Shown piece after piece: positions 3,456 to 52,099 of a stretch of DNA of 64,000 bases; the first letter of the stretch is position 1; every line of letters begins with the position of its first letter. Source of the DNA: Hyaloraphidium curvatum SAG 235-1 (taxonomy: Eukaryota > Fungi > Monoblepharomycota). The position numbers and the translations under genes were made by a program. Below the pieces are notes generated by a model. It was not told where the DNA came from. It saw only the letters and a program-made list of their open reading frames with translations, and ran no database searches. The stretch is from the NCBI GenBank assembly GCA_025558095.1, contig JAIVFI010000035.1, forward strand, positions 434,001 through 498,000, read 5' to 3'.

Positions 3456-3473
3456 ATCACGGAGGTCGGACCA
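3456..3473 (-). promoter_or_regulatory. Primer binding site (TGGTCCGACCTCCGTGAT)
   Basis: TGG-initiated sequence 1 nt inside the LTR end (..GTCGCA C TGG..), upstream of gag. The priming tRNA was not identified. Confidence 0.7.
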
Positions 3474-3474
3474 G

Positions 3475-36176: not shown

Positions 36177-37195
36177 ATGCTGCGTTGGCGCTACGCCCTT
36201 GCCGTCGCGGCCGCCCTCCTGGCAGGCTCGTCTCTTGCCGCGCCTTTTGTTTCCTCGCCGCCCCGCGAGGCCGTAGCCACGCTCGTGACTTCCCCGGGCT
36301 TCGTCGCCGGTGCCGCGGTGCTCGCGCGCACGGTGCGCCGCCATTCGCCCGGACGCGACCTGCTGGCGCTGATCCCCGCCGGGAACACGCTAGGCGCACG
36401 GCACAGGACGATGCTCGCGCAGGTCGGCTGGCGGTTGGCGGACGTCGCGGACGTGCCGTTCCCCGTGCCCGTGCACCTCCGCTGGAAGGACATGCTGGTC
36501 AAGCTGCACCTGTTCAAGCTCATTCAGTACGATGCAGTAGCATACTTGGACGCGGACGCGTACCTTGTGGGCGAGATCGACGTGCCGTTCCGAGTTCTGC
36601 GGGAGTCGGGCGCGCCGCTGGCTGCCGTGGTGGAGCCGAGCAGGTTGCCCGTGTCACCGTACAACGAGACACTCACGGGTGCTTTCAACGTGGGTTGGAT
36701 CCCGGGATCCCGGTCCAGCGCGCGCGGCCCTCGCTCACTCGGCCTTTCCTGCAGGCTGGGGTCTTTTGGATCAAACCGACCGGCGAGGACGGCTTCCGCA
36801 ACCTCGTGGACCGCGCTGGCACGTACTCTGCCGGCAAGTACGGCGACCAGCCCTTCCTAGTCCGCGAGTTCGCCTGGGTTGGCGTCTGGCTCCCCGCCGC
36901 GTACAACAGCATTTTCAAGTACCGAACGCTGTACCCGCACCCGGGCTACCCGGGGCCCCAAGGGCCGCGGGTGATCCACTTTGCGGGCAACTTCAAGCCC
37001 TGGGCCTTGTGCGTGGGGCATCCCGAGACGAAAAACGTCTGTGATCAGCAACACCCTTACATGGAGGGCTGGAACGCCGAGTTTGCCGCCGCGTTCCGGG
37101 AAATGGGGTGGACCGAGGCGGACTTTGCGGGTGAGAACGGCACAGTGATCGTGGATTTCGAGAGGGTTTTTCGGCGGCATCCGGACGCGCGATGA
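36177..37195 (+). CDS. GT8 glycosyltransferase (glycogenin/GUX-like fold), N-terminal anchor, one intron (~36689-36753); copy A1
   Basis: ATLVT..FVAGAAVL, KLHLFKLIQYDAVAYLDAD, FN|AGVF, GDQPFL, YN, IHFAGNFKPW. Confidence 0.9.
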
Positions 37196-37553
37196 TTCGT
37201 GACCAGATGACCAGACGCAATTCGCAGCATCATGAGCGGGTCTGGTGTTTGCGTCGATGGCGAGGTCCGCTGCGCCGAATGCATGAGCGGTGGACGGAAT
37301 GAGCGACTTGACTCTTTTGCTTAAACAATATACACGAAAACTTGTCTCTACCTAGCAGAGCAACATTCTTAGACATGCACGCTATTGTGTACGACGTCCA
37401 ACGCGATACGAAGCTGTGCCCCACATAAGCTACCCTTCTCTTCGTGGCGCCACCTACCCGTTGCCGCCCTTGAGCCGTTGGTTCGGGGAGGAGCCGGTGG
37501 GCCCCAAGAAACCGCAATAACGTGGGACGAAGACAGCGAAGCTGCTTCTGCTA

Positions 37554-38609
37554 ATGAGGCGGTCGCAAGCCCTCGCCACCGCGGCTGCCCTCCTGGCAAC
37601 AGGCGCGTTGTTTGCCGCGCGTGTACTGTCGCCGCCGCGCGAGGCCGTGGCCACCCTCGTGACGGCGCCTGAGTTCGTCGCGGGCGCCGCTGTTCTCGGG
37701 CGCACGCTGCAGCGATACTCGCCCGGACGCGACCGGCTGGCGCTGGTCCCACCCGGAAACATTCTCGGAGAGCGGCACAGGGCCATGCTCGCGCAGGCCG
37801 GGTGGCTCGTGGCGGACGTGGAAGCCGTTCCATTCCCCGTGGCCGTGAACGCGTACTGGAAGGACATGCTCGTCAAGCTGCACGTGTTTAAGCTGGTGCA
37901 ATACGACGCCGTGGCCTTCATGGACGCCGACGCGTACCTTGTGGGCGAGATCGACTTGCCGTTCCGAGTTCTGCGGGAGTCAGGCGCGCCGCTCGCGGCG
38001 GTGTTGGAGCCGAGCTTCAAGCCCGTGCCGCCGTACAACGAGACCCTCACGGGTGCTTTCAACGTGGGTGCAGATCCTAGTCCCGCGCCGCCGTCGCTCA
38101 CAGCTTTTTTCCTGCAGGCTGGGGTCTTTTGGATCAAACCGACCGGCGAGGACGGCTTCCGCAACCTCGTGAACCGCGCTGGCACGTACTCTGCCGGCAA
38201 GTACGGGGACCAGCCCTTCCTCGTCCGCGAATTTGCCTGGGTAGCTGTCTGGGTCCCGGCGCGCTACAACAGCATCCTCAAGTACCGAACCCTGTTCCCG
38301 CACCCGGGCTATCCCGGGCCCGAAGGGCCGCGGGTGATCCACTTTGCGGGCAACTTCAAGCCCTGGGCCTTGTGCCTTGGGCATCCCGAAACGAAGAACA
38401 TCTGTGATCAGCAGCACCCTTACATGGAGGGCTGGAACGCCGAGTTTGCCGCCGCGTTCCGGGAAATGGGGTGGACCGAAGCCGACTTTACAGGCGACAA
38501 CGGGACTGTGGTCATTGAATTCGAGAGGGTTTTTCGGGCACATCCGGAGGCGTACAGGGCAACGAGCGGATCTCGGCAAGTAAATTCGGTGAGCGCCGCG
38601 CATCCGTGA
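37554..38609 (+). CDS. GT8 glycosyltransferase copy A2 (tandem duplicate; in-frame intron ~38064-38117)
   Basis: Same motifs; highly similar to A1. Confidence 0.9.
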   Translation: MRRSQALATAAALLATGALFAARVLSPPREAVATLVTAPEFVAGAAVLGRTLQRYSPGRDRLALVPPGNILGERHRAMLAQAGWLVADVEAVPFPVAVNAYWKDMLVKLHVFKLVQYDAVAFMDADAYLVGEIDLPFRVLRESGAPLAAVLEPSFKPVPPYNETLTGAFNVGADPSPAPPSLTAFFLQAGVFWIKPTGEDGFRNLVNRAGTYSAGKYGDQPFLVREFAWVAVWVPARYNSILKYRTLFPHPGYPGPEGPRVIHFAGNFKPWALCLGHPETKNICDQQHPYMEGWNAEFAAAFREMGWTEADFTGDNGTVVIEFERVFRAHPEAYRATSGSRQVNSVSAAHP

Positions 38610-38680
38610 CCGGCATTCTTGCGAAGGCAATACAGATACGATCTTTCGTTTGCACTTCCGGCTTCCGGAGAAAATTATAC

Positions 38681-40584
38681 TTAGCTCCACCCGCTACGGG
38701 GATGCACGGCTTTCTGCGAAGCCTTCTTCCCGCGCGTTGGTCCGTGCCTGTTCACCACCATCCTCACACCCAGCGCGCCGCACACCTTCACCCTGGGCTC
38801 CAGGCACACCTCTAGCACCGTGCCCCTCGCCAGCCCCGTGACCACGCTCACCTCGTACGGCGCCGGCGGATCCCGGCCGGCGTCGACGAGCTCGTACCGC
38901 CTTTCGTGCAGCTCCTCGGTTCCGTTCTTCAGCAGTTTCACCACCAGCGCGGCGCCCGCGGCGCACCGGGCCGGCACGCTGCGTGTCTGGAGGGTGATCT
39001 TGACGGCGGCCGATTCCGTGTCCGCGTGCCACTGTCGGCACGCGGCATAGGCGAGGTCCTTCCCCCGATCGGGGATTGCAGGCCTCTGGGTGCTCCGGCG
39101 GATCGCGCACGCCTCGGCCGGGGATCCGTCCCTGTTTGGGCCGACGAACTCCTTCTCCCCCGTGCCGTCCCCGACCGGACGGGTGAAGTTGAGCAGCTTG
39201 AAGTCGGACAGCTTGCCGCCCGCCAGCTCCCGATAGCCATAGAACCAGCTCTTGAATCCCTGCGAAATCCGTCAGCATCGTCGATTACCGGATGAAGCAG
39301 CAGGCGGCGGCCACCGACCTGTTCGTCCTTGAAGTTGCCCTCGGAAGCGGCCAGCCCCATGTCCTCCACGTTGTTCTCCATCAGCGCCCGACATTTGGCT
39401 GGGTCGAACGTTTCCCCGAGCATGTCGTACGCCTGTTTCAAACCGCTCGACGGGCCGTCGTTGCAGGAAATGAGGTCGTCAAACTCGACCATCACGGATT
39501 CGACGCCGGCCCCGAAGCGCTTCCGGGAATTGACCAGGTCGTGGATTTCGCGGAACCACTCCAACTGCTGCTTCAAAAGCTTCTCCGTCCACGCGCGGTC
39601 GGAATCCTTCCACCATGCGCTGTTCATGATGTCCTTCTCGCGGTACCCAAAGACGATGGCCGTCCGAGGGAACAGCGTGGTCCAGTGATCCAGGAAAGTG
39701 ACCGACATGTTGTACTGGCACGCGTTCAGGTTGAAGAGGCGAAGCTCCTTGAATCCAGAGGTCACGTAGCCGGGCACGTGCTGGAGCACCTCGCCGACCA
39801 CGAGCCTGAGCAGCCCCTCCAGGCGCGGCATGTCGAACCGGTTGAAGTACGACGGCTTCTTGGGCAGCTTGGGCTCGCCATAGCGGGTCGCGTTCCAGGG
39901 GTGCACGTAGTGCGCCCGGAGCTTGAGCGTCGCCTCGCGGAAGGTGTCGGCCGTGAGCCGGTTCTCCATGGTCGAGGCGCCCATGAGCTTGGCGAACAAA
40001 AGGAGGTTCTCCCCGCGAATGTTGTAGCACGGGATGGTGTTGAGCAGTCGCATCAGGGTGGTCGAGCCCGAGCGGCCCTGCGCGAGGACGAGGACCATGT
40101 CGAACTTGCGCTTCTTCCGCGGGAACACCGCCGGCGCAGGGGCATCGAGGGAGGGAAGGCACGAGGTCGCCGGCGGGCCCAGATCGGCCAGCTGCCTGAT
40201 CAGCGGGCCGTAGTAGGTCCTCTCGACGTTGCCGGCGAGAAACGCGGGGTCCGCCGCGCCCGGTCCTGCCGGCGGTCCCTCCCCGCCGGCCGCTGCCGCT
40301 TTTTCCGGGCGCGCCGGCGACGCGCACGGCGGGCCGACAGGGCATTCCCGCGATCCGCAGTCGGCCGCCGAAAGATTTGCTGTTCGTGTCGCCGCGGCGT
40401 AGCGGCGACCGTCCGACGCCGTCGTGGCGTCCGGGACGCCAAGCTGCGGTTGGAGCCACAGGACAATGACGACCCCGGCGGTCGCGACGAGGAGGATAGA
40501 GGCAGGCAAGCTGCCGCTGTCGGAGCACCTCGGACGTGCCCGCGTTGGTGACATTTGCGGAACGCGATTCTCGATCGTGCGCAT
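38681..40584 (-). CDS. Type II membrane sulfotransferase (P-loop, Sulfotransfer_3/Stf0-like) with an extra C-terminal domain; intron 39260-39318
   Basis: TM ASILLVATAGVVIVLWL; AQGRSGSTTLMRLLN (5'-PAPS loop), IRGEN, GFKE. Splicing joins in frame to ORF 38681..38977. Confidence 0.8.
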
Positions 40585-41775: not shown

Positions 41776-41872
41776 TAGTGCGCCTTCTACCGACCACGAT
41801 ACACAAACTATTCTTCATGGATGCAGACGAGGCGGATTCGTCCGGTGCGCGGCGACGCGGCGGGCTTGCAGA

Positions 41873-42913
41873 TCATTGCCGCTGCTCCTTTCTTCCGAAG
41901 CTGTCCGGATCCGGCACCCGCTCGCGCGCCGGCCGGCCCCCCAAAAGCCCCCCCCCGCGGTTCATCAGGTCCGAAAAGAGCACCTCGCACTCCCCGGTCG
42001 AGTTCGCAAAATCCGCGGCCTCCAGGCGGAGCTCCCGCGCCGCCTCCGCAAACCCGTCCCACCACTGCTGCATCGCGGGGTGCGGTTCCACGCAGAACGG
42101 CTTCGACTCGGGAAACCCCCCGCAGGCCAGCCACGGCTTGTACTTGCCGGCAAAGTGCACGATCAGCGCGCGCGCAGGCTCGTAGTACCCCTCCACGTCG
42201 AAAAAGTTGAAGGCCATGTTGAACCACTTGGGCAGGCCCAGGTAGCGCCCGGCATACGTGCGGACGAGAAATGGCTGGTCCCCTAGCATGGTGTCCGGGT
42301 GATAGCGGGAGCGCCGGAGCAGATCCGCGTGCATGCGGGCCGAGGGGCGGAGGAACAACACGCCGGCGTTGAAGTGCCCCGAAAAAGCGTCGTTCCACGG
42401 CCCCTTGGCCTTCCGCAGCGGCGCATTCACGGCGGCCAGCTCGGCCGTGGAGGCTAGGAGCAGGCGGAGGGCCTCGCCGACGGGCCCGGCCAGGTAGGTG
42501 TCGGCGTCGAGGTAGGCCACCGCCGCATACTCCGCCATCCCCCAGGCGTGGACCTTGCCCAGCGTGTCGCGCCACTGCCGCGGCACCGGCCCCGAGAACG
42601 GCACCGCGTCCACGCCGGCCACGCGCCAGCCGGCCCGCGCGAGCGCCCCGCGCGCGCGCGCGCCCAGCTCCGCGTCGGCGGGGACCAACGCAATGCGGTC
42701 CAGCTCGGGGGCGTGGGTCGCCAACGTGCGCGCGAGGACGACGGCGCCGGCGAGGTAGCCCGGGGAGGAGACGATAGTGACGGCGGCGAGGCGGGCCGGC
42801 CGGGGCGCGGGGCCGTCCACGAGGCGGAACAGCGCCATGGTGCCGAAGAAGCCGACGGCTGGGAGTATGATCCGAGCCAGCCGTACGGACAGGGCCGGCA
42901 GGAGGCGCGCCAT
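41873..42913 (-). CDS. GT8 glycosyltransferase, divergent copy B, intronless
   Basis: YLAGAVVLART, KVHAWGMAEYAAVAYLDAD, FNAGVL, GDQPFL, VHFAGKYKPW; N-terminal TM. Confidence 0.9.
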   Translation of the reverse strand: MARLLPALSVRLARIILPAVGFFGTMALFRLVDGPAPRPARLAAVTIVSSPGYLAGAVVLARTLATHAPELDRIALVPADAELGARARGALARAGWRVAGVDAVPFSGPVPRQWRDTLGKVHAWGMAEYAAVAYLDADTYLAGPVGEALRLLLASTAELAAVNAPLRKAKGPWNDAFSGHFNAGVLFLRPSARMHADLLRRSRYHPDTMLGDQPFLVRTYAGRYLGLPKWFNMAFNFFDVEGYYEPARALIVHFAGKYKPWLACGGFPESKPFCVEPHPAMQQWWDGFAEAARELRLEAADFANSTGECEVLFSDLMNRGGGLLGGRPARERVPDPDSFGRKEQRQ

Positions 42914-43415
42914 GAGGGGTGTCAAACACGGGCACGGGAACAGCCCCCGCCGGACCCGAGCGAGTCATTGTAGGGCTGGTGTCCCCGTGTCCTTGCGCGG
43001 CGGCCTGATTTACTGCGGCTTCATCCAGAGATACAAGCATGGAAGCAATGAGCCTTGACAAAGTGCCCTCTCGGCAGGAGGCCCTCCCCGTCGATTTCCC
43101 GGCCTAGGCGGAGTTCCCGCAAAAGGCCACGCGAACGCTTCGCACCCCTCATGATCATGCGGCTCCACGCAGGTGTCCGGCGCAGCAAACAGCTCGCACG
43201 GATGCCAGGGCTTGCACCGCCCCGCAAAGTGGGTTGTCGCGGCCAGCGCAAGTAGGTACGAGGAGCCGATTCATATTCCGGCCCCCGAAGAGGGGACGTA
43301 TAGCACGGGAGGCGCCTTTGTCCAATAGCGTGGGTGACCGGAGGCGGCGCCGTCGTCCTTCGCAGAATCATTTCCACAAGGCGGTCGTTGGAGGTTCGCT
43401 CAGGTGACCCCGAGC

Positions 43416-44141
43416 TCACGGTGCCGGATGATGGCGGGTCATCACCTCCGCCCCCGGCTTGCTCGTCAGCTCGAAGGAGCACCCGAGCAGGAGACACACG
43501 TACCCAAAGTCCGACTCGGAAAATGGCGTGACCCACATGTATTCCGGCCGCACGAGGCGCTCCCGAGCCCGGTACTGGAGCAGCACTACGGACCTGCCGA
43601 ACAACGCCGTGGCGCGCAGCACGTCGACCTTGCTCAGGACGTAGTCGAACGAGCCGAGGAAGGCGAAGGCCACGCGTTCCTTGCCCGCGAGCTCCGCGAA
43701 CGGGAACTGGAGCGCGTTGAGGTCGCACACCACTGTGCCGTTGTGGCGGGATTCGATGTCCACGGGCAGGTATTCCGCCAGCGCCTCGAGACCCTCCTTT
43801 GCGAGGGCGCGCTTCAGCTCCATGTGCCCGGCGCCCATGTCGGCCACGGCGCAGCGGTCGGGGTGGCAGCCGTGCAGGAAACGCGTCTGCTTGAGCCAAA
43901 GGGCCGCGGAGCGGGCGCGCGGCGCCACGTCCATGTAGAGCGAGGAGTTGAAGAAGCGCCGGACCGGGCCCGGGGGGGGGGCGGGAGCGCCGCGCAAGCA
44001 GGGGCGGAACCGCACGGGCACGTCTACGGCGCCGGGCTCCGCCAAATCCGGGCCGGCAGAAACGAGCACCAGAGCGGCAACTGCGGCCAGCACGATCGTA
44101 ACAGCGGCGGCGGCATGCAGCGCGCCCTGTGGCGGCCGCAT
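43416..44141 (-). CDS. Membrane-anchored class I SAM-dependent methyltransferase
   Basis: TM AAVTIVLAAVAALVLV; VADMGAG (motif I), YLPVD, VCDLN, FLGSFDYV. Confidence 0.7.
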   Translation of the reverse strand: MRPPQGALHAAAAVTIVLAAVAALVLVSAGPDLAEPGAVDVPVRFRPCLRGAPAPPPGPVRRFFNSSLYMDVAPRARSAALWLKQTRFLHGCHPDRCAVADMGAGHMELKRALAKEGLEALAEYLPVDIESRHNGTVVCDLNALQFPFAELAGKERVAFAFLGSFDYVLSKVDVLRATALFGRSVVLLQYRARERLVRPEYMWVTPFSESDFGYVCLLLGCSFELTSKPGAEVMTRHHPAP

Positions 44142-44229
44142 CGTAGGCGTAGGCCGTGAAGTTTCCCGTCTCCCCTTCCTCGACCGCCCGCCGCTCCTCC
44201 TCAAAGACCACGCGGAGCCGCGTCCCCCC

Positions 44230-45100
44230 GGTCCACCCTCATCACGTGTCCGTAAAACCCCAGTGCCGCAATGTGGTCGGGACCACGATCGGCATCTCTC
44301 CGGTCAGACCGAAGACGATCGCCTCCGACACCGTCGACGGGAGGCCGAGGTAGCGCCGCAGGCTTGCGACATGGACGCCGTTGACGGAGTTCGGGGAGGC
44401 GTCGAGGAACGAGGAGGGATCTATCGGGAGTTGGACCGTGAGCGCCGCGCCGTATGTGCCAGTCCCCGTTACCACGCTCCGATAAAGCATCAAGCCGAGC
44501 TTGGTCGGGAGAACTCGGTGGTCGTTGGAGAGCCCGACGAAATCGCGCGGCGCCTGCATCAGTCGGCCATGCCGTGCCTGTAGGTCAGTTAGCGTCGTGT
44601 CGTGTTCGCGGGTTAGCTTCCCCAGGTGACTCTATTCCGTCACCTCGGGTACCTCCTCTTCCAGGAGCGTCAGCCGCCTCGTCTCCCCCGCGGGCTTGTT
44701 GAAGACCTGGCGCCGCGGTCTTCCGTGGACCAACGTTGGGCTTGATCCCGTTGGCCACGCTGTACGAGCCGGCCGTCAAGTGCCCGTTGCGCATCGGCGT
44801 GCCCGAAGCACGGTATCGCCGCATCGTCGGCGTAGAGCACGGCCGTGATGGCCAGCACGAGCTCCGCGCCGTCCTCCCCCAACTGTTCGGCCCCCACCCG
44901 AAAGCCCTCCACTCCTCCAGCCCGAAGGTATCGTGCCAGCTCCGCGAGGTCGAGGTTGAACTCGCCGCAGGAGTCAGCGTTCCCCTGCGGGAGCCCGCAG
45001 AACGTGATCTCCGGAGACCACACTTACCGAATCGTACGCTTTCTCCCAGTCAACGAACAGGACATACAGTACTTCACCGGACTTCCGAGCTCGTCGAATG
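44230..45100 (-). mobile_element. Decayed LINE-type reverse transcriptase fragment
   Basis: ITAVLYADDAA, GIKPNVGPRKT and LYRSVVTGTGTYGA, spread over several frames with stops. Confidence 0.65.
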
Positions 45101-45304
45101 GGAGCTTGAACTAGGTAAATGGCGTCCATGGGCGAGCGCTAGGGCACGAATCCGACTTGTGTAGGATCCAGAATCTTGTTTGCCGCAAAGAACTTGGCGT
45201 TGCGAATGCGGAGCGCTTGGGAGAACACGCACCTTGCGAGCCGTTGACGACTTCATGAGCATCCTAAGGGCGTCGGTGCGGGGGCAGGGGACACCACCCA
45301 CCCG

Positions 45305-45875
45305 AGTCAGCATTGACACATTCCACTCTTACTGCCTCACCCTCTCCCTCCGCCAGCCCGCACCTGCACGGGCGTCCCCCGCGCCAATCATCGCCGCCAA
45401 CACCTCCTCCTCTTTACGACACGGCCGGCATCGCCTCGCTCATCCCGGCGCACCTGCAACCGGGGTCGTCTGGATCGACCAGGAGGTCCCCGAGCGCGAT
45501 TTCAAGACCTTCGAGAGCACCTGGCGGTACCGTGCCGCCGCCGAGGCCCGCATCACCCTCTTGGCTTCGGCTGGGGCCGTCATCACCTCCCGCCTGCACG
45601 TCCTCCTCCCCTCCATCGCCCTCAGCGTCCCGCCATCTACTACTCTCCCCCGAAACGGGCCGGCGACCCGCGGCTGGCCGGCTTCCTGGATGACCCGGAG
45701 GACCTCCCCGCTACGTGGGAGCCGGCGCAGCTGGAGGGCTTTAACTGGGTGAACCCCGCACGGACCGGCAGGGTGCTGAGGATGCTGGCGGCGGGAGTGC
45801 TGGCGGGGCTGTTGGCGCAGCATCCGGAGCTGGCGAGGGCGGCGGGGATGATGGGGACGGTGCCGGATGCCGGAG
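45305..45875 (+). pseudogene. Inverted, frameshifted 3' copy of the polysaccharide pyruvyltransferase
   Basis: FHSYCLTLSLR, VITSRLHVLLPSIAL and LLAQHPELARAAGMMGTVPDAG match 47470-48045 reverse-complemented. Confidence 0.9.
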
Positions 45876-46231
45876 ACTGCGTGGGAGAGTGGGAGTGTCT
45901 GAGGTACACCGCCACCAGTGAATGGCGCTACTATATGGATAGTAGCGCCTTGATTTTAGCTCCTATTCAACCGGCAAACTGATCTACTCACCCTACTACA
46001 ACAACCTAATCAGACCGACGCGGAAGGCATCGGTCAAATTCCATTGCCGTCGGTAAAGAGAGCACGAACACAGCCCGCCGCAACGGTTTTGCCAAGCCGT
46101 TTCGAGGCATACAGCCACCCGTCGTTCATGATCACTACAAGTCCGTTCCCAAGTCAGCAGCAACTTCGTGAGCTTCTTAGACAGTGACCGACGATGCAAA
46201 AGCAAATAAGGTTGTTCATGGCCTGCGCTGT

Positions 46232-47254
46232 CTACCCCCCAGAGTGTGCCCGGCGAGGAGATACTGCATCATCTCCCGAGGTAGAGGAACCCAGCATCCA
46301 ATCCATCACCAAGGGGCAGCACCGCACCACCCTGTCCCGCAGGTACGTGCAGCTCGCGGTTGCCGCATCTCGCAGCTTCCTATAATCCCCGAGCGACCGC
46401 GGCTTATACTGCTGATCTGGAGCGCCGATCTTGGCCAGTGCCTCGGCGGTGGATTTGTAGATGTAGTGGTATAGGGCCGCCGGCCCGCCGTGGGAGGGGT
46501 TGGTAAGCCACGCCCGCATGCGGGGGACGTACTCCGCCGGCGCCCCCTCGGCGTTCACCACCGTCGCCCCCGGCGTCAGCAGAGGCTGGTGGGCGTTGTG
46601 CATGCCGAGCAGGTCGCGGCAGCGCGCAAAGGTTTTCGCTGTCCGCGACGTGTTATACGACGTCGGCAAGCAGTTGGAGTAGCTCGCAAGCGTGCCCCCT
46701 CCCGGCCGTGTCTCGTGCTCCTTCCCGACCATGACGATCCAGTTCAGGTGCACCCCCGACGCATTCGGAAAGCCGTCCAGGAACGTGGGCAGCCAGGGCC
46801 GCTCCTTCCTGAGGACGACGAACTCGTCGACGTCCACGAACCCCATCCAGCCGCCCGCGGGGCAGCGCGACGCGCATCTCGCGTAGGCGCGGTGTTGCGG
46901 CGAATCGGGAAACGCGACGTTGCCGCGCGGGCCTGGCGGAACCGGCCGCACGTCGACGTCTGCGGACGCGTGCGGGAACGGCGGGCTCGAGCCGTCGTCG
47001 TAGACCAAGAACTGCGAGACGCCTATGGAGCGGTGGTAGTCGAGCCATTCGGCCGCGTCCTCGTTGGCGTTGCGGACGAGGAGGCACATCCATACCGGCG
47101 GGCCCGCGGGGTGTGCTGCTGCAGCCAAAGTTCCCGATGGCGCCGAAAGCGACTGGGGCCACAGCGCCGGGAGACCGCGGGCACGAAAAGCCAATTGAAC
47201 ACCAAAAATCCCGATGAACGCGGCGAGTCCAAGCAGGAGCTGGCGGTTTCGCAT
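46232..47254 (-). CDS. GT92/DUF23-type (GT-A) glycosyltransferase, type II membrane
   Basis: TM LLLGLAAFIGIF; EWLDYHRSIGVSQFLVYDDGS, QHRAYARC, WMGFVDVDEF, NW, LYHYIYKS. Confidence 0.85.
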   Translation of the reverse strand: MRNRQLLLGLAAFIGIFGVQLAFRARGLPALWPQSLSAPSGTLAAAAHPAGPPVWMCLLVRNANEDAAEWLDYHRSIGVSQFLVYDDGSSPPFPHASADVDVRPVPPGPRGNVAFPDSPQHRAYARCASRCPAGGWMGFVDVDEFVVLRKERPWLPTFLDGFPNASGVHLNWIVMVGKEHETRPGGGTLASYSNCLPTSYNTSRTAKTFARCRDLLGMHNAHQPLLTPGATVVNAEGAPAEYVPRMRAWLTNPSHGGPAALYHYIYKSTAEALAKIGAPDQQYKPRSLGDYRKLRDAATASCTYLRDRVVRCCPLVMDWMLGSSTSGDDAVSPRRAHSGG

Positions 47255-47456
47255 GGGCCGGGCGAGAGCCCAGCGCTCTCACGTGCAGATGAGACACGCC
47301 GCGCCGACAACGGCGCGGCCAAAAGCGTGTCTTACAGGACCTCAGCAATTCAGCTAATCCACTTTGATGCAATGCCCGTGGATTCTCCGTGAGACCAATA
47401 TGACCGTAGCAAAACTTAACATACACGACCCAAAGGTGCACGACCCCTCAGTCCCC

Positions 47457-49502
47457 TCAGTCGGTCGCGCGCAACCCTCCCGCATCCGGCACCGTCCCCA
47501 TCATCCCCGCCGCCCTCGCCAGCTCCGGATGTTGAGCCAAAAGCCCCGTCAGCACCCCCGCCGCCCGCGTCCTCAGCGCCCTCCCGGTCCGCGGCGGGTC
47601 CTCCCAGTCGAACCCGGCCAGCTTCGCCGGCTCCCAGGCAACGGGAAGGTCCTCCGGGTCGTCCAGAAATCCGGCCAGGCGAGGATCGCCGGCCTGCGAG
47701 GGCAGCTGGTAGTAGATCGCAGGGACGCCGAGGGCGATGGAGGGGAGGAGGACGTGCAGGCGGGAGGTGACGACGGCCCTGGCCGAGGCGAGGAGGGCGA
47801 GGCGCGCTTCGGCGGCGGGGAAGTACTGCCACGGCTTCGTAAAGCCTCCGAATGTTCGCCCCGGGAGGTCCTGCGCCACCCAGACGACCAGCGGGTGCAG
47901 GTGCGTGGGGATGAGCGAGGCGATCCCAGCCGTGTCGTGGCGGAAGGAGGTGTTGGCCGCAACGATGGGTGCGGGAAAGGCGCGGTGGAGGTGCGGTCGG
48001 CGAAGGGAGAGGGTGAGGCAGTACGAGTGGAAAGCATCGAGGCCCGCCGAAGACAGGCGCTCGGCGGAGGTGCGGTCGCGGGTAGGGACGGAGTGCGAGC
48101 CCCGGAAGCTGGAAACGAGCGGTTCGGTGGGGATGGTGTTCGACAGATGGGCGGCGATCCAGAAGGGGCGCCAGTTCGGGGGCAGAGGCCATGGTACGAC
48201 TTCCGGGCCTGTGCAGGGGATCCGCTTGCCGTTCTCATCGTGGCAGAGGTGGACCAGCTTGCCCGAGCGGGCGTCGACATATTGCCGCGGCTTCCAGAAA
48301 GCGTTTCCGACGAAGTTGATCTCGGTCGCGTTCGTGATGGGCGCCAGGAGAGCCGGGTGTGGGAGCACCTCGTGGTTGTCGCGCTCGGCAAAGGCGTCGA
48401 CGCGGGGCAGAAAGGCCGCGGCCGTGAGGGATTGCACCTCATCTCCAAGGTTGCTCGTCCTGTAGGCCAGAACGGCCCATACCCTGGCGCGGCCGCCCAT
48501 CCACCCCGGCAGCACGCGGCAGGAGCGGAAAGCCGGCACGTCGTCGGCCGGGGGTGTGCCGGAGCGCAAGTCACCGGTGTGGGTCCGGAGTATGTCCGCG
48601 AGCTGCGATCCGGGCTGGATGGCTCCGAAAAGGGAGATGCGGCGGCAGTCTACCGTCGAGACCCCCGCCGAAGGCGGATCGACCGGAGCTGACGAGTTGC
48701 GGCACACATCACCGACAGCCACGGGTGCATCAAGCATGCAGATGGAATTGCAGAGCTGATTCGCGGAGGCCGAGGCGCAGCCCGCTTCGGTCCACCAATT
48801 GGCGAGGAGGTCGCCCGCTGTTTCCATGCACAGTCCCTCGTTCATCATGCACGCGTGCAGCGCCGCGGCCATGTGTTCCATGATTGCCCAGACTGCCTTG
48901 GAGCGGGGCTTGGACGCGATCAGCACCGCCGGGTGAGGGGTACGCTTCGGCGCCCCGAGCCGGTGCGGCACGGCCAGCTCCCATCCGGCCTGACAACGGC
49001 CCGTCAAGGCGTTGAGATCGAGTCCGTGTCGCCACAAGGTGCCAGCCTGGGCCGCCGTGCCGCCCGAGGTCCACACCGAGGCCAGCTGTGCGGCGAGCTC
49101 CAGCTGTTGTGGGAACAGGGGCCCGGCCGCCACGCGCCACAGGGAGCCGGATCGCGCCGTGGCAATCATCGGCGTGCCGTGCAGCACATGGAGCGCCGCA
49201 AAATCGCGGAAATGCAGCGGGGCGGCGCCGGCAAGCGAGCGTGTCGCGGCCGACGCCGGGGCAGGGGAGAGCAGAACGGCGGGGCCGCGAACCGCCCGTG
49301 CCAGAGACGCAGCCGCCGCCACGTCCACGCAGCCCAGTTCGTCCACTGCCGCGCGCACCGCGATGGAGGCCCCGATCCCCGGGGACAGCCCCTCGCCGCT
49401 TGCCGCCGCGCCGCCCGCACGCCGCGCCGCCCCGAAGCCGGCGGCACCCGCTGCCAGCGCGACGGCGACCAGCCGCAGGAACGACGCCATGCCGCGCGCC
49501 AT
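47457..49502 (-). CDS. Polysaccharide pyruvyltransferase with an additional ~330-aa N-terminal domain and signal/anchor
   Basis: SNLGDEVQS, TRDRTSAERL, SYCLTL, VVTSRLHVLLPSIALGVP. Confidence 0.85.
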   Translation of the reverse strand: MARGMASFLRLVAVALAAGAAGFGAARRAGGAAASGEGLSPGIGASIAVRAAVDELGCVDVAAAASLARAVRGPAVLLSPAPASAATRSLAGAAPLHFRDFAALHVLHGTPMIATARSGSLWRVAAGPLFPQQLELAAQLASVWTSGGTAAQAGTLWRHGLDLNALTGRCQAGWELAVPHRLGAPKRTPHPAVLIASKPRSKAVWAIMEHMAAALHACMMNEGLCMETAGDLLANWWTEAGCASASANQLCNSICMLDAPVAVGDVCRNSSAPVDPPSAGVSTVDCRRISLFGAIQPGSQLADILRTHTGDLRSGTPPADDVPAFRSCRVLPGWMGGRARVWAVLAYRTSNLGDEVQSLTAAAFLPRVDAFAERDNHEVLPHPALLAPITNATEINFVGNAFWKPRQYVDARSGKLVHLCHDENGKRIPCTGPEVVPWPLPPNWRPFWIAAHLSNTIPTEPLVSSFRGSHSVPTRDRTSAERLSSAGLDAFHSYCLTLSLRRPHLHRAFPAPIVAANTSFRHDTAGIASLIPTHLHPLVVWVAQDLPGRTFGGFTKPWQYFPAAEARLALLASARAVVTSRLHVLLPSIALGVPAIYYQLPSQAGDPRLAGFLDDPEDLPVAWEPAKLAGFDWEDPPRTGRALRTRAAGVLTGLLAQHPELARAAGMMGTVPDAGGLRATD

Positions 49503-50206
49503 CGCGACGGCCGGCCCGATTATCCCGCTGCTGCGGATTAAGGGACTTTGGTCCCGGATCCGACTGGGGACTGCCCGGCGCCGCGTCAGCCTTCCTCCTC
49601 GCCGTGGCTGCGGTCTTTTCCTTGTCGGGTTTTGCCACTATGCCGCCGCCCGCGGTGGGCTGGCGGGCGGGCGCTTCCCGGGTCGGGGGGCAAGGATGGG
49701 GACGCAGGCTTCAAACCCCTCTTCTCCGGGGACGCCCTAAGTGCTGCGAACGTTCATCGCGGTTTGAAGTGCCTCCTCAACGCCGCGATGCACCGCGCAG
49801 CCTTGGAGGGGCGTCCGCTGCGTCTGGGCGTCGAGGGCGGCTCGCTCGTCGCCCCGTCCCCAGATGGGTTCCCCGCACTGCTCGCGTGGATGCTGTGTGA
49901 CAGGCCCGGAACCCCGTTGCACCTTCCGCACCCGTAGCCTGAGCTTGTGGTCCGACAGCGCGTCGTGCAGCTGCCGAGGGGGGGGGATGGATGGCCACGC
50001 ACTGCTGAACCTGACCACCAGCGGCATCGGCGTGGAGATCGCGGGGACGGCAGCGTTTGCGCTGCCGCGGCCCGACCGCGGATCGGCGGATGCTGGTGTC
50101 GCCGGGTAGTCTGTGGCTCTCGTTTGGTTGGCGGATTGTCCACGAGTTGTTGTGGGAGAGAGAAGGAAAGAGTCTGTTTTGCTCTTCCCTGTCCACGCAA
50201 ACAGCC

Positions 50207-51228
50207 TCAAACGGGTCCGGGAGAGCGCGCGTCCGGATGCCGCCGAAAGACCCTCTCGAACTCGACCACCTCCGTCCCGTTCCCGCCGCCAAAGTCCGCC
50301 TCGGTCCACCCCATCTCGCGGAACGCCGCTGCGAATTCGGCGTTCCACGCCTCCATCAGAGGGTCCTGTACCCCGCAAAAGTCCCGCGACTCGGAATGGG
50401 GCGCGCAGGGTCCCCACGGCTTGAAGTTGCCCGCAAAATGGACCACCCTGGGCCCGCCCGGCCCGGGGTAGCCCGGCAGGTTGCGGAGCTTGAAGATGTA
50501 GTTGTAGGGCGAGGGTACCCACACGCCCGCGAAGGAAAACTCGCGCACGAGGAAGGGCTGGTCGCCCATGTCGAGGGCGGGGTAGGACGCCGCACGTTCC
50601 AGCAGGGAACGGAAGCCGTCCTCGCCCGTCGGCGTGATCCAAAAGACGCCGGCCTGTGGGGGGTACCCCGTGAGCGGGGGACGTGAGCGGGGGACGCGCA
50701 GGAAACCGAAACGGCAAACCGGCCCACATTGAAATGCCCCGTCAGGCTCTCGTTGTACGGCGGCACGGGTGTTTTGCTCGGCGCGAGCACGGCAGCGAGC
50801 GGCGCGCCCGATGCCCGCAGCACGCGGAACGGCACATCGATCTCGCCCATCAGGAACGCGTCGGCATCCATGTACGCCACGGCGGCGTACTGCTGCAGCT
50901 TCCATATGTGCAGCTTGACCAGCATGTCTTTCCAGCGCGGGTGGACGCGCTGCGGGAACGGCACCGCGGACACGTCCGCCGCGCGCCAGCCGGCCTGCGC
51001 GAGCATCGCCCTGTGCCGCTCGCTCAGAGTGTTCCCGGGGGGAACCAGGGCCAGCCGGTCGCGCCCGGGCGAGTGCCGCCGCAGCGTCCGCGCGAGGACC
51101 GCCGCCCCGGCGACGAAACCGGGCGAGGTCACCAGGGTCGCCACGGCCTCGCGCGGCGGCGTGACCACGTACGGGGCGAGCCAGGCGCCCGTCAGAAGGG
51201 CCGCCGCCGCGGCGAGGGCGCGCTTCAT
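50207..51228 (-). CDS. GT8 glycosyltransferase copy A3 (one intron, inverted relative to A1/A2)
   Basis: Same motifs and the same FN|AGVF intron position as A1/A2. Confidence 0.9.
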
Positions 51229-51589
51229 GGACCCCTTGTGAGGATTCGTTGCACGGGCTCGACAAAGCAACTTCGACCCCTGCGTCTGGAGCCTGTTGCC
51301 ACCAATCGCGACGTACAAAACAAGATACGGGATGATGTGAAAAGCCAGGAATCACGATGGTCGCCTTGCCGATAGCGGATAGTGACCTTGTTGTGGGGTT
51401 CGTAGTGGGGGCCGAGGATGATGACTGCGGCACGGGTGACAGCCGACTTGAATGCCGCGTTGGCCGAAGTGCGGGCTTCGGGGCTGGATGCTTCGGAGCT
51501 GGAGACGTAGTTGCCCTCGAGCGCACTGGCGCTATGGCAGGATGCCAGGTTGGGCCATGCCGGGGGCCAGAGCCGTCGGCTCTCTCGCG

Positions 51590-52099
51590 CGCGGAGGCGC
51601 GGAGCTCGCGTCGATCTCTTCACCGCCAGGTCGAGCTGCTGCTCCGGAAAGACAGCCAGGCGCGGGCCATCTGGCTGAGCGTCAAGGCAGCGGAAGCCGG
51701 TGCTGCCTTGGATTCTTCATCCTCGACAAGGACATGTCAATGGACAACGACACAACTCGGGACGAGATGTCGTATCGGCTGGGGCTGCCGCCCGCCTGGT
51801 GGGTGGCTCTCGTGGCCGCTGGATCGTTCAAGTGCCCCGTGTGGGGCGCTACAAGCCCTGGCTTCCCTGCGGGCTGTTTGCCAAGTCGGAACCCTTCTGT
51901 GCGGAGCCGCATCCGGCGATGCGGCGGTGGTGGGACCCGTTCGCGTCGGCGCGCGCGCGAGCTGCGCCTGGAGCCCGCGGATTTCGCCGATTCGACGGGG
52001 GAGTGCCAGGTGCTGTTTTTGGACCTGATGAACGGTGGTGGGGGGCTGCTCGGAGGCAGGCCGGGGGCGGAAAAGGCGCGGGATGCGGGCCGGCGGTAG
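51590..52099 (+). pseudogene. Degenerate inverted copy of the GT8-B 3' end
   Basis: RYKPWLPCG..EPFCAEPHPAMRRWWD..ELRLEPADFADSTGECQVLF matches the 41873 gene; frameshifted, 5' part eroded. Confidence 0.8.

What the first reader, a model, noticed from the sequence alone, without database searches (positions are those of the whole stretch)
36177..52099. Candidate fungal gene cluster for a sulfated, pyruvylated, methylated glycan
Seen: in ~16 kb every recognisable host gene is a membrane-anchored transferase, namely four GT8, one GT92, a sulfotransferase, a SAM methyltransferase and a polysaccharide pyruvyltransferase. Relic copies and retroelement debris fill the gaps. Known: GT92 members are beta-galactosyltransferases or galactan synthases, pyruvyl-galactose is made by S. 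pombe Pvg1, and sulfated-pyruvylated galactans are typical of algae. Eukaryotic Golgi glycan genes are normally dispersed. Inference: this is a capsule-locus-like cluster that builds and decorates an anionic wall, mucilage or adhesive polymer. I know of no described fungal equivalent.
Basis: partly seen in the sequence, partly recalled or inferred. Interest (0 to 1): 0.88.

Follow-up and report, generated by a model that had tools for sequence, protein, structure and literature searches.

The report
Fungal cluster of glycan-decorating transferase genes
In the aquatic fungus Hyaloraphidium curvatum, eight intact genes for membrane-anchored sugar-adding and sugar-modifying enzymes (sulfate, pyruvate and probably methyl) sit side by side far more tightly than chance allows, which gives testable candidate genes for an acidic surface glycan of a kind so far known chemically mainly from algae.

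Summary
Window 36177-51228 carries eight intact genes and no other recognisable host gene: four glycogenin-like GT8, a Sulfotransfer_3, an MTase-fold protein, a GT92/GT2_4-like GT-A and a PS_pyruv_trans. Each has one N-terminal hydrophobic anchor. Broken copies and a dispersed repeat fill the gaps.

A tool result names the organism, Hyaloraphidium curvatum.

**Clustering:** the five families have about 44 independent loci in 31.9 Mb. Random placement put all five within 16 kb in 0 of 200,000 trials.

**Functional genes:** the GT8 paralogues show dN/dS of 0.12-0.31. Three of them share one intron position. Contigs of one probable RNA run cover the MTase, GT92-like and pyruvyltransferase genes.

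**New here:**
- The "methyltransferase" has no Pfam hit. Its relatives, fold and motif support the call, and some relatives are fused to pyruvyltransferase or glycosyltransferase domains.
- GT8-sulfotransferase-GT8 recurs on contig C30.
- GT92-like genes sit beside unrelated pyruvyltransferases in a second glycan island on C2.
- A Zn2Cys6 regulator flanks the cluster.

**Not supported:** a capsule-like pathway that builds a polymer. There is no backbone synthase, sugar-nucleotide gene, transporter or exporter. Decoration of glycoprotein or glycolipid glycans is more likely.

**Untested:** product, co-regulation and synteny. The scan's earlier notes hold no such cluster on other DNA.

The parts
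31330..34740 (-). Flanking Zn2Cys6 / Fungal_trans transcription factor, divergent from GT8-A. It is a candidate cluster regulator, not shown to act on the cluster.
   Evidence: Fungal_trans E=4.7e-9. A Zn2Cys6 motif (CX2CX6C...CX2CX6C) lies at about 34559 on the minus strand. The genome holds at least 70 such regulators. Four of 37 glycan islands have one within 5 kb, against 0.98 expected.
36177..37195 (+). GT8-A: glycogenin-like family 8 glycosyltransferase, 317 aa. Exons 36177-36689 and 36755-37195, with a 65-nt GT..AG intron.
   Evidence: Exon 2 scores GT8 21.2 bits. 82% protein identity to GT8-B, dN/dS 0.27. Removing the intron restores the frame and gives 'FNAGVFW', as in intronless GT8-C. 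DAD motif, HFAGNFKPW motif and N-terminal anchor are present.
37554..38609 (+). GT8-B: 333 aa. Exons 37554-38063 and 38118-38609. The 54-nt intron is in frame and has no stop codon.
   Evidence: Pfam GT8 31.2 bits. Intron at the same position as in A and D. N-terminal anchor. A copy with 83-87% identity (91% over the spliced alignment) lies on C30.
38938..40584 (-). Golgi-type sulfotransferase (Sulfotransfer_3), 548 aa, with a transmembrane anchor near residues 26-44 and a 'GRSGST' PAPS-loop-like motif.
   Evidence: Pfam 29.5 bits against a cut-off of 27. At least ten paralogous loci in the genome, at 34-74% identity. The nearest Atlas clusters are eukaryotic (diatom and cnidarian) sulfotransferases, including TPST-like ones. 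No relative with a solved structure at E<=0.1.
41873..42913 (-). GT8-C: intronless, divergent GT8, 346 aa.
   Evidence: Pfam GT8 41 bits. Glycogenin-1 structures at E=1.4e-8 over residues 42-290. The database gene model P0053 is identical. 39-43% identical to A, B and D.
43013..43270 (-). Relic GT8 fragment ('HFAGRCKPW...').
   Evidence: Six-frame reading. blastn match of 43157-43226 to 51840-51912.
43416..44141 (-). Membrane-anchored class I SAM-methyltransferase-fold protein, 241 aa, single copy in the genome.
   Evidence: No Pfam hit. Single copy. 52 relatives in 1.84 billion representatives, and 10 of 33 aligned relatives hit Methyltransf_23. AlphaFold pLDDT 84.2. Foldseek top hits are all SAM methyltransferases, including the sugar C3'-methyltransferases TcaB9 and KijD1. 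Relatives are fused to PS_pyruv_trans, GT4 or GT9 domains. A run X1 contig covers it.
44205..44800 (.). Dispersed repeat (mobile-element fragment), transcribed. It holds a 50-nt GT..AG splice joint at 44437/44488.
   Evidence: 90-95% identical copies on C23 and C45. Joint seen in run X1. Weak RVT_1 match at 44673-45023 (E=0.12).
45321..45875 (+). Inverted relic of the pyruvyltransferase 3' third.
   Evidence: 81% DNA identity to 47477-48032. 52-80% protein identity to residues 462-675.
46232..47254 (-). GT92 / Glyco_tranf_2_4-like GT-A glycosyltransferase, 340 aa, with an N-terminal anchor and a 'DVDEF' motif.
   Evidence: Pfam PF13704 42 bits and PF01697 28.9 bits. Paralogues on C2, C10 and C28. 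A run X1 contig of 1309 nt spans 46007-47289.
47457..49502 (-). Pyruvyltransferase, 681-aa ORF. It has an N-terminal anchor, a conserved Cys-rich domain of unknown function (about residues 106-340) and a PS_pyruv_trans domain (about residues 340-681).
   Evidence: Pfam 31.1 bits, matching profile positions 123-275 only. 100% identical over 505 residues to NCBI 'hypothetical protein DFJ74DRAFT_392999 [Hyaloraphidium curvatum]'. The metagenome relative P0055 aligns over residues 106-674 at 37% identity. Run X1 contigs are unspliced over 47502-49277. No similarity to solved Pvg1 or CsaB chains at E<=0.1.
50207..51228 (-). GT8-D: 315 aa. Exons 51228-50728 and 50653-50207, with a 74-nt GT..AG intron at the same position as in A and B.
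   Evidence: dN/dS of 0.22-0.29 against A and B.
51850..52084 (+). Inverted relic of the GT8-C 3' end. It marks the right edge of the duplicated region.
   Evidence: 80.5% DNA identity to 41929-42142. tblastn match to GT8-C residues 260-339.

Best explanation
This is a genuine, lineage-specific cluster of eight type-II-anchored, secretory-pathway (Golgi-type) transferases in Hyaloraphidium curvatum. They most likely act together to extend and cap one class of cell-surface glycan.

Proposed roles:
- The four glycogenin-like GT8 enzymes add alpha-linked sugars.
- The GT92/GT2_4-like enzyme adds a beta-linked sugar, probably galactose.
- The adjacent pyruvyltransferase, the sulfotransferase and the methyltransferase-fold protein then decorate the chain with pyruvate ketal, sulfate and O-methyl groups.

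The product would be an anionic glycan on glycoproteins, glycolipids or wall or mucilage material.

The cluster grew by local tandem and inverted duplication (GT8-A, B and D, plus the relics). Parts of it were copied elsewhere in the genome. The divergently placed Zn2Cys6 regulator may control it.

Shown here: family and fold assignments, intact genes under constraint, non-random clustering, and probable transcription of three genes.

Inferred: Golgi location, joint action on one substrate, the sugars involved and the role of the regulator.
For: **Families and anchors:**

**Clustering beyond chance:** 0 of 200,000 random placements put the five families within 16 kb.

**Eukaryotic, functional genes:**
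- GT8-A, B and D share an intron position with GT..AG ends. Removing the intron restores the frame.
- dN/dS is 0.12-0.31 among GT8 paralogues at dS 0.43-0.77.
- In run X1, word depth is 240, 119 and 62 over the methyltransferase, GT92-like and pyruvyltransferase genes. It is 2.4 in the spacer at 47310-47509, and one GT..AG joint is present. That pattern fits RNA.

**Functional links from outside the cluster:**
- Relatives of the methyltransferase-fold protein occur as natural fusions with PS_pyruv_trans (P0015, P0027, P0040). They also occur with GT4 plus a sugar-transfer ATP-grasp (P0050) and with GT9 (P0044). P0015, P0027 and P0040 lie on metagenome contigs; that of P0027 is the one that looks eukaryotic by its genes.
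- The block GT8-B / sulfotransferase / GT8-C recurs in the same order and orientation on C30.
- GT92-like genes lie next to pyruvyltransferases twice more on C2. One of these GT92-likes is 69% identical to the window's, yet its neighbouring pyruvyltransferase shows no detectable similarity to the window's. The pairing is therefore not one copied block.

**Regulator:** a Zn2Cys6/Fungal_trans gene flanks the cluster.

**Chemistry is plausible:** red-algal galactans that are pyruvylated, sulfated and methylated are known, and S. pombe caps N-glycans with pyruvylated galactose (PMC6801904).
Against: - No product is known.
- No co-expression data exist. Only one run was found, its RNA nature is a guess, and contig depth is not a measure of expression.
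- Synteny in other Monoblepharidomycetes could not be examined.
- Much of the density comes from duplication. Four of the eight genes are GT8 paralogues, so only five independent families are linked.
- The genome has other glycan islands. Regional clustering may partly reflect how this genome duplicates and retains such genes rather than pathway selection.
- The fusion evidence is at family level only. The pyruvyltransferase domains of the fusions are not detectably similar to the window's.
- Pfam scores for the sulfotransferase, GT92-like and pyruvyltransferase genes are only a few bits above their cut-offs.
- Sulfotransfer_3 also includes protein-tyrosine sulfotransferases.
- Acceptor and donor specificities cannot be read from GT8 or GT92 membership.
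Confidence: 0.55

Rival explanations
1. This is a duplication hot-spot rather than a pathway. Glycan-transferase genes of this genome sit in duplication-prone, repeat-rich regions. This neighbourhood arose by successive local and segmental duplications without selection for co-function. The enzymes serve different glycans or proteins.
For: Four of the eight genes are GT8 paralogues. Relic fragments of GT8 and pyruvyltransferase genes and a dispersed repeat lie between the genes. Parts of the cluster are copied to C30, where the copy looks decayed, with an in-frame stop in the sulfotransferase and an internal gap in the GT8-C-like gene. A second heterogeneous glycan island lies on C2.
Against: Duplication explains paralogues, not the meeting of five unrelated families, one of them single-copy. 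The genes are intact and constrained. GT92-like/pyruvyltransferase adjacency recurs with non-homologous pyruvyltransferases. Methyltransferase-pyruvyltransferase fusions exist elsewhere.
Confidence: 0.25
2. This is a complete capsule or exopolysaccharide locus. The cluster alone builds and exports an anionic wall, mucilage or adhesive polymer in the manner of bacterial capsule loci.
For: The gene content resembles the decorating part of bacterial capsule or exopolysaccharide loci (glycosyltransferases, pyruvyltransferase, sulfotransferase, methyltransferase). The Atlas neighbours of the pyruvyltransferase are bacterial capsule-synthesis fusion proteins (a lead only).
Against: No initiating transferase, processive synthase, flippase or polymerase, exporter, sugar-nucleotide enzyme or transporter was found among the ORFs of 36-52 kb. 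The genes carry spliceosomal introns and type-II anchors typical of Golgi enzymes. The flanks encode a transcription factor and a PPR protein.
Confidence: 0.1
3. The block was acquired horizontally. The cluster, or most of it, came as a unit from an alga or a bacterium.
For: The relatives of the methyltransferase-fold protein traced so far lie in a green-algal assembly (GCA_003203535.1) and in metagenome contigs, some of them marine or eukaryote-like by their genes. Pyruvyltransferases are mainly bacterial (PMC6801904). The nearest feature-space neighbours of the sulfotransferase are from diatoms and cnidarians.
Against: The affinities point to different groups for different genes. GC content matches the rest of the window. 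Introns are present. The sulfotransferase, GT92-like, GT8 and pyruvyltransferase families each have many paralogues spread over the genome. No donor-like syntenic locus was found.
Confidence: 0.07

Closest known systems
Galactosaminogalactan (GAG) five-gene cluster of Aspergillus and Metarhizium (uge3, sph3, ega3, agd3, gtb3)
   Same: A fungal chromosomal cluster of genes for a surface or extracellular glycan, described as a co-regulated cluster (PMC8224951, PMC7229062).
   Different: The GAG cluster holds a sugar epimerase, a large membrane synthase, hydrolases and a deacetylase, and makes a cationic polymer. The cluster here has only Golgi-type terminal transferases and anionic or methyl decorating enzymes. 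It has no synthase, and its product is unknown.
S. pombe Pvg1 pathway (pyruvylated galactose caps on N-glycans)
   Same: A eukaryotic, Golgi-located PS_pyruv_trans enzyme that caps beta-galactose and confers negative surface charge (PMC4872226, PMC6801904). Here too a galactosyltransferase-like gene sits next to the pyruvyltransferase.
   Different: As far as I know the pvg genes are not reported as a cluster in S. pombe (my own knowledge, not checked here). The window enzyme shows no sequence match to solved pyruvyltransferase chains at E<=0.1. It also carries an extra conserved Cys-rich N-terminal domain.
Bacterial capsule and exopolysaccharide loci with pyruvyl-, sulfo- and methyltransferases
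   Same: Glycosyltransferases sit together with a pyruvyltransferase, a sulfotransferase and a methyltransferase in one locus (for example the Cobetia marina sulfated capsule locus, PMC11766843, listed but not read in detail).
   Different: The genes here are eukaryotic, with introns, type-II anchors and separate transcription units, and the locus has no Wzx/Wzy, ABC or synthase machinery.
Sulfated, pyruvylated and methylated galactans of red and green algae
   Same: The same three decorations are predicted here (pyruvate ketal, sulfate ester, O-methyl). [quoted passage not shown] Relatives of the methyltransferase-fold protein occur in a green-algal assembly.
   Different: That is a chemical analogy only. 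As far as I know, no enzymes for these algal decorations have been assigned, and no such polymer has been reported from Hyaloraphidium.

Membership tests
CAZy GT8 / Pfam PF01501 (glycogenin-like clade) | Profile match above the gathering score | tested here: met
   GT8-B 31.2 bits and GT8-C 41.0 bits against a cut-off of 24.3. A (exon 2 alone 21.2 bits) and D qualify through 72-82% identity to B.
CAZy GT8 / Pfam PF01501 (glycogenin-like clade) | DxD metal/nucleotide motif, the C-terminal HxxGxxKPW motif, and similarity to solved GT8 enzymes | tested here: met
   D-A-D ('MDADAY' or 'LDADTY') and 'HFAGxxKPW' are present in all four. Glycogenin-1 at E=1.4e-8 over residues 42-290 of GT8-C.
CAZy GT8 / Pfam PF01501 (glycogenin-like clade) | Retaining alpha-glycosyl transfer with a defined donor and acceptor | not testable with these tools
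   Needs an enzyme assay.
Sulfotransfer_3 (PF13469) carbohydrate sulfotransferase | Profile match above the cut-off and a PAPS 5'-phosphosulfate-binding loop | tested here: met
   29.5 bits against 27, covering profile positions 2-215 of 216. A 'GRSGST' loop is read.
Sulfotransfer_3 (PF13469) carbohydrate sulfotransferase | The acceptor is a carbohydrate rather than protein tyrosine or a small molecule | tested here: inconclusive
   Atlas neighbours include clusters named protein-tyrosine sulfotransferase as well as unnamed diatom sulfotransferases. No solved relative.
CAZy GT92 (PF01697) | Profile match above the cut-off, and GT92 as the best-matching family | tested here: inconclusive
   PF01697 scores 28.9 bits against 23, but PF13704 (Glyco_tranf_2_4, the same GT-A clan) scores higher at 42 bits on an overlapping stretch. 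The genome-wide PF01697 scan did not list this gene.
CAZy GT92 (PF01697) | Beta-1,4-galactosyltransferase activity | not testable with these tools
   Needs an assay. No solved relative at E<=0.1.
PS_pyruv_trans (PF04230) ketal pyruvyltransferase | Profile match above the cut-off | tested here: met
   31.1 bits against 25.3, matching profile positions 123-275 only. The database copy P0054 and the relative P0055 also carry PF04230.
PS_pyruv_trans (PF04230) ketal pyruvyltransferase | Close relationship to the characterised enzymes Pvg1 or CsaB | tested here: not met
   No PDB chain matched at E<=0.1, although Pvg1 has a crystal structure (PMC4872226). Membership is at superfamily level only.
Class I SAM-dependent methyltransferase | Rossmann-like methyltransferase fold with a glycine-rich motif I and acidic motif II | tested here: met
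   The model has pLDDT 84.2. All top Foldseek hits are SAM methyltransferases, with E down to 2.7e-6 and TM about 0.5. D101, G103, G105 and D128 are 90-100% conserved in the family alignment. Ten of 33 relatives hit Methyltransf_23. The protein itself has no Pfam hit.
Class I SAM-dependent methyltransferase | The substrate is a sugar hydroxyl | tested here: inconclusive
   Relatives fused to pyruvyltransferase, GT4 or GT9 domains point to glycans. There is no direct evidence.
Fungal biosynthetic gene cluster (co-regulated pathway cluster) | Physical linkage of unrelated pathway genes beyond chance | tested here: met
   0 of 200,000 random placements.
Fungal biosynthetic gene cluster (co-regulated pathway cluster) | Co-regulation, a cluster-specific regulator, and conserved linkage in relatives | not testable with these tools
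   Only one run of uncertain kind was found. A Zn2Cys6 factor is adjacent, but its role is untested. No related fungal genome was reachable.
Bacterial-type capsule or exopolysaccharide locus | Initiating transferase plus polymerisation and export machinery in the locus | tested here: not met
   None found among the ORFs of 34-54 kb that were scanned against Pfam.

The most novel reading that the evidence does not exclude
Hyaloraphidium curvatum organises Golgi glycan decoration in several regulator-flanked gene clusters: this one, the C2:289-352 kb island and the C30 block. This cluster encodes the first genetically defined eukaryotic pathway for a glycan that is at once sulfated, pyruvylated and O-methylated. 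That would include a new family of membrane-anchored glycan methyltransferases, which other eukaryotes fuse to pyruvyltransferases. It would supply the missing enzyme candidates for the analogous algal galactans.
Probability: 0.25. Interest if true: 0.85.

Novelty: new variant of a known kind. Interest (0 to 1): 0.62.

Why it matters
**Why clustering is unusual.** Genes for eukaryotic Golgi glycosylation are usually scattered, so pathways must be pieced together gene by gene. A physically clustered set of transferases gives a ready hypothesis for a whole decoration pathway. The set here has a single-copy methyltransferase-fold gene and a neighbouring Zn2Cys6 regulator.

**Gaps it could fill.**
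- Sulfated polysaccharides of fungi are barely studied (PMC11625862).
- Ketal pyruvylation in eukaryotes is genetically defined essentially only for S. pombe Pvg1 (PMC6801904).
- To my knowledge, the enzymes that pyruvylate, sulfate and methylate algal galactans are unassigned.

**What follows if it holds.** The methyltransferase-fold family was unannotated and has no Pfam hit. It recurs fused to pyruvyltransferase and glycosyltransferase domains. If the cluster acts as proposed, this family and the pyruvyltransferase with its extra Cys-rich domain become testable candidates for those reactions. Hyaloraphidium would then be a fungus with an alga-like anionic surface glycan, which bears on how this non-motile planktonic fungus stays suspended, adheres or resists grazers.

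Tried and rejected
- **Bacterial origin of the window.** I suspected this at first from 65-75% GC and long ORFs. I rejected it because the genome is 31.9 Mb, Fungal_trans domains and spliceosomal introns are present, and NCBI names the organism.
- **Word-indexed protein searches.** The searches with the methyltransferase and GT8-C returned only the window's own proteins, probably because Ala/Gly-rich words saturate the candidate list. This says nothing about relatives. The exhaustive HMMER search did find 52 relatives of the methyltransferase.
- **Single-sequence fold of the methyltransferase.** It failed (pLDDT 38). Only the alignment-based model was used.
- **Metagenome scan with the pyruvyltransferase.** It gave only 23-25% identical, uninformative loci. 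The contig of the closest relative, P0055, holds one neighbour with a sub-threshold TPT match (E=0.01). That gives no synteny evidence.
- **Methyltransferase relatives P0002, P0003 and P0012.** Their contigs were too short for context.
- **GT32/Caps_synth-like N-terminal half of the pyruvyltransferase.** The Atlas suggested this.
- **Fusion pyruvyltransferase domains.** They are not similar to the window's pyruvyltransferase by BLASTP. The fusion argument is therefore kept at family level.
Only weak EamA matches were reproduced, and no GT8.
- **rRNA, tRNA and Rfam scans of the window.** All were empty.
- **Spliced GT8 models.** I used them only inside scripts, for the anchor scan and dN/dS. 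All searches were run by reference on single exons or ORFs.

Full report
**Where the window lies**

The window is contig C35:434001-498000 of a 31.9-Mb, 55-contig genome with 61-77% GC (2-kb windows). I first suspected a high-GC bacterium, but the genome is fungal. It has at least 70 Fungal_trans regulators and spliceosomal introns. The pyruvyltransferase ORF is 100% identical over 505 residues to NCBI 'hypothetical protein DFJ74DRAFT_392999 [Hyaloraphidium curvatum]', which lies on a contig of the same length as C35. Earlier scan notes named the same organism. The window has no tRNA or Rfam matches.

**What is there**

In map order:
- GT8-A: 36177-36689 and 36755-37195, + strand.
- GT8-B: 37554-38063 and 38118-38609, + strand.
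- Sulfotransferase: 38938-40584, - strand.
- GT8-C: 41873-42913, - strand.
- A GT8 relic: 43013-43270, - strand.
- A methyltransferase-fold gene: 43416-44141, - strand.
- A dispersed repeat: 44205-44800.
- An inverted pyruvyltransferase relic: 45321-45875, + strand.
- A GT92/GT2_4-like gene: 46232-47254, - strand.
- The pyruvyltransferase: 47457-49502, - strand.
- GT8-D: 50207-50653 and 50728-51228, - strand.
- An inverted GT8-C relic: 51850-52084, + strand.

Pfam supports GT8, Sulfotransfer_3, GT92 together with Glyco_tranf_2_4, and PS_pyruv_trans, all above their gathering scores. No other ORF of 34-54 kb that was scanned gave a family, apart from the flanking genes. The flanks are a Zn2Cys6/Fungal_trans regulator (31330-34740, - strand) and a PPR protein (53138-54499, + strand). 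The regulator is divergent from GT8-A, and its Zn2Cys6 motif lies at about 34559.

All eight proteins have a single N-terminal hydrophobic segment. That is the usual topology of Golgi transferases, but the location is inferred, not shown.

**The GT8 genes**

GT8-A, B and D are 72-82% identical in protein. GT8-C is 39-43% identical to them. A, B and D share one intron position, with lengths of 65, 54 and 74 nt, GTGGG. donors and CAG acceptors. Removing the intron restores the frame in A and D. It also gives 'FNAGVFW', matching the uninterrupted 'FNAGVLF' of intronless GT8-C. In B the intron happens to be in frame and free of stop codons.

All four carry a D-A-D motif and 'HFAGxxKPW'. GT8-C matches glycogenin-1 structures at E=1.4e-8. 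dN/dS among A, B, D and the C30 copy is 0.12-0.31 at dS 0.43-0.77, so the copies have been kept under purifying selection. The spliced models were used only inside scripts.

**The 'methyltransferase'**

This was the least certain part of the observation. The ORF has no Pfam hit even at E=1, and it is single-copy in the genome. An exhaustive HMMER search of 1.84 billion representatives found 52 relatives. Ten of 33 aligned relatives hit Methyltransf_23.

The family conserves D101-x-G103-x-G105, D128 and further positions. An AlphaFold model built with that alignment reached pLDDT 84.2. It matched only SAM-dependent methyltransferases in the PDB, among them the sugar C3'-methyltransferases TcaB9 and KijD1, with TM about 0.5. 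The fold call is therefore sound, but the substrate is not known.

Several longer relatives are natural fusions:
- P0015, P0027 and P0040 join this domain to a PS_pyruv_trans domain.
- P0050 joins it to a sugar-transfer ATP-grasp and a GT4.
- P0044 joins it to TPR repeats and a GT9.

The three pyruvyltransferase fusions lie on metagenome contigs, one of them from a TARA sample. The P0027 contig looks eukaryotic, carrying SET, bestrophin, Got1 and a GT47 exostosin gene. Another relative lies in assembly GCA_003203535.1, which I recall to be the green alga Raphidocelis; I did not check that name.

This ties the family to glycan modification, and specifically to pyruvylation. The tie is at family level only. 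The pyruvyltransferase domains of the fusions are not detectably similar to the window's enzyme.

**The pyruvyltransferase**

The 681-aa ORF has three parts: an N-terminal anchor, a Cys-rich region (about residues 106-340) and the PS_pyruv_trans domain. A metagenome protein, P0055, aligns over residues 106-674 at 37% identity. Both the extra domain and the C-terminus are therefore conserved.

The NCBI model (524 aa) starts at M112 and leaves the ORF after residue 616. Run X1 contigs are continuous across that point. No solved pyruvyltransferase matched at E<=0.1, so the enzyme is not close to Pvg1 or CsaB.

An Atlas hint that the N-terminal half resembles bacterial Caps_synth/GT32-pyruvyltransferase fusions found no support in Pfam. 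It remains open.

**Is the density more than chance?**

Genome-wide scans gave these counts:

| Family | Hits in the genome |
|---|---|
| PS_pyruv_trans | 11 |
| GT8 | 9 |
| Sulfotransferase | 18 |
| GT92-like | 14 |
| Methyltransferase-fold | 1 |

After same-family hits within 20 kb were merged, this leaves 10, 5, 16, 12 and 1 independent loci. Placing these 44 loci at random on 31.9 Mb never put five families within 16 kb in 200,000 trials. Four families occurred 3 times and three families 697 times. The counts are lower bounds, but even a several-fold increase would not change the conclusion.

**Recurring modules elsewhere in the genome**

- **C30:130-136 kb.** It repeats GT8-B-like / sulfotransferase / GT8-C-like in the same order and relative orientation as the window, at 83-87%, 63-65% and 82% protein identity. 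The sulfotransferase there has an in-frame stop, and the GT8-C-like copy lacks its middle.
- **C2:289-352 kb.** This is a second and larger glycan island. It holds three or four pyruvyltransferases, two GT14 'Branch' genes, up to four GT92-like matches (one with an EGF domain, and the weakest seen only by the paralogue scan), a GT61-like gene, a CTP_transf_3 cytidylyltransferase and a Fungal_trans regulator.
- **An independent pairing.** A GT92-like gene there is 69% identical to the window's and sits about 1.2 kb from a 622-aa pyruvyltransferase ORF. That ORF shows no phmmer similarity to the window's pyruvyltransferase. GT92-like/pyruvyltransferase adjacency has therefore arisen or been kept with different partners, which argues for a functional pairing rather than one copied block.
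- **Regulators.** Fungal_trans regulators lie within 5 kb of 4 of 37 glycan islands, against 0.98 expected (Poisson P about 0.02). This test was post hoc, so it is a lead only.

**Expression**

Only one public run holds the region, and its kind is a guess. When it was laid on 43510-49509:
- Contigs end near gene ends. A 1309-nt contig covers 46007-47289 around the GT92-like gene.
- Word depth is 240 over the methyltransferase gene, 119 over the GT92-like gene and 62 over the pyruvyltransferase gene. It is 2.4 in the spacer at 47310-47509.
- One 50-nt GT..AG joint is present at 44437/44488, inside the dispersed repeat.

This pattern fits RNA rather than DNA, so these three genes are probably transcribed. 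It cannot show co-regulation, and contig depth is not a measure of expression. GT8-A, B, C and D and the sulfotransferase were not covered by the single call allowed.

**Interpretation**

The best reading is a set of co-functional Golgi-type enzymes that extend and decorate a surface glycan. The GT8 enzymes would add alpha-linked sugars and the GT92-like enzyme a beta-linked sugar, probably galactose. Pyruvate ketal, sulfate and methyl groups would follow.

A capsule-like locus that builds a polymer would need a backbone synthase, an initiating enzyme, sugar-nucleotide genes, a transporter or export genes, and none is present. Decoration of N- or O-glycans, glycolipids or a polymer made elsewhere is more likely. 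It would also parallel the pyruvylated-galactose caps of S. pombe (PMC4872226, PMC6801904).

The acceptor of the sulfotransferase is uncertain, because Sulfotransfer_3 also includes protein-tyrosine sulfotransferases.

The triple decoration has a chemical precedent. [quoted passage not shown]

**Comparison with what is known, and novelty**

A fungal exopolysaccharide cluster is already known: the five-gene galactosaminogalactan cluster (PMC8224951). 'No fungal equivalent' is therefore true only for this enzyme set and chemistry.

My paper searches found no report of clustered Golgi transferases with sulfo-, pyruvyl- and methyltransferases in a fungus, and nothing on Hyaloraphidium surface glycans. 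Fungal sulfated polysaccharides are described as little studied (PMC11625862).

I rate this a new variant of a known kind. It is a eukaryotic glycan gene cluster whose content resembles the decorating half of bacterial capsule loci but is built from eukaryotic Golgi-type genes. It also contains an unannotated methyltransferase-fold family.

**Limits**

No related fungal genome was reachable, so synteny is untested. Co-expression and the product are untested. Several Pfam scores are only a few bits above their thresholds. The fusion and adjacency arguments are at family level.

Noticed in passing
G000:C2:289000-352000 (loci L003-L006, L013): A second and larger glycan-gene island. It holds three or four PS_pyruv_trans genes, two GT14 'Branch' genes, up to four GT92/GT2_4-like matches (one with an EGF domain, the weakest seen only by the paralogue scan), a GT61-like 1273-aa ORF, a CTP_transf_3 cytidylyltransferase (a CMP-sugar-synthetase type) and a Fungal_trans regulator.
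   Followed up: partly
G000:C30:130400-136500 (loci L011, L012): A segmental copy of the GT8-B / sulfotransferase / GT8-C block in the same order and orientation. The sulfotransferase has an in-frame TGA, and the GT8-C-like copy lacks its middle part. The GT8-B-like copy keeps the intron (59 nt) and has dN/dS of 0.12 against GT8-B.
   Followed up: partly
window 31330-34740 (-); also C35:380187, C2:321140, C1:303505: Zn2Cys6/Fungal_trans regulators lie next to several glycan-gene loci. Four of 37 islands have one within 5 kb, against 0.98 expected (post-hoc P about 0.02).
   Followed up: partly
window 47457-49502 (-): The NCBI gene model for the pyruvyltransferase (524 aa) omits the N-terminal anchor and replaces the conserved C-terminal 65 residues. 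A metagenome homologue and unspliced contigs favour the full ORF. Residues 106-340 form a conserved Cys-rich domain with no family assignment.
   Followed up: partly
loci L022 (155-2740), L023 (9718-11910), L024, L025: Natural fusion proteins of the new methyltransferase-fold family with PS_pyruv_trans, on metagenome contigs (one from a TARA sample). On L022 and L023 they sit near Methyltransf_21 genes, and on L023, which looks eukaryotic by its genes, also near a GT47 exostosin gene.
   Followed up: partly
window 44205-44800: A dispersed repeat with 90-95% identical copies on C23 and C45. It is transcribed on the + strand and has a 50-nt GT..AG intron (44438-44487). Its identity is unknown, and the only reverse-transcriptase signal nearby is weak.
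   Followed up: partly
window 38064-38117: The GT8-B intron is 54 nt, in frame and free of stop codons. Retaining it would insert 18 residues beside the conserved 'FNAG' motif without breaking the protein.
   Followed up: no
window 1541-8468: An LTR-retroelement-like region with a 1199-aa ORF carrying RVT_1 (4869-8468, +). An ATG ORF at 4021-4872 overlaps its start by 4 bases.
   Followed up: no
G000:C35:419400-427800 (L007 5403-8234 +, L008 782-3769 -): An inverted pair of ORFs of about 950-1000 aa with weak EamA-transporter matches (28.1 and 20.1 bits against a cut-off of 28.2). An earlier scan note calls them EamA-GT8 fusions, but Pfam showed no GT8 part here.
   Followed up: partly
G000:C15:609898-618281: A sulfotransferase fragment, 88% identical to residues 203-283 of the window enzyme, lies about 8 kb from a strong PS_pyruv_trans gene (77 bits). 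This is another sulfotransferase/pyruvyltransferase neighbourhood.
   Followed up: no
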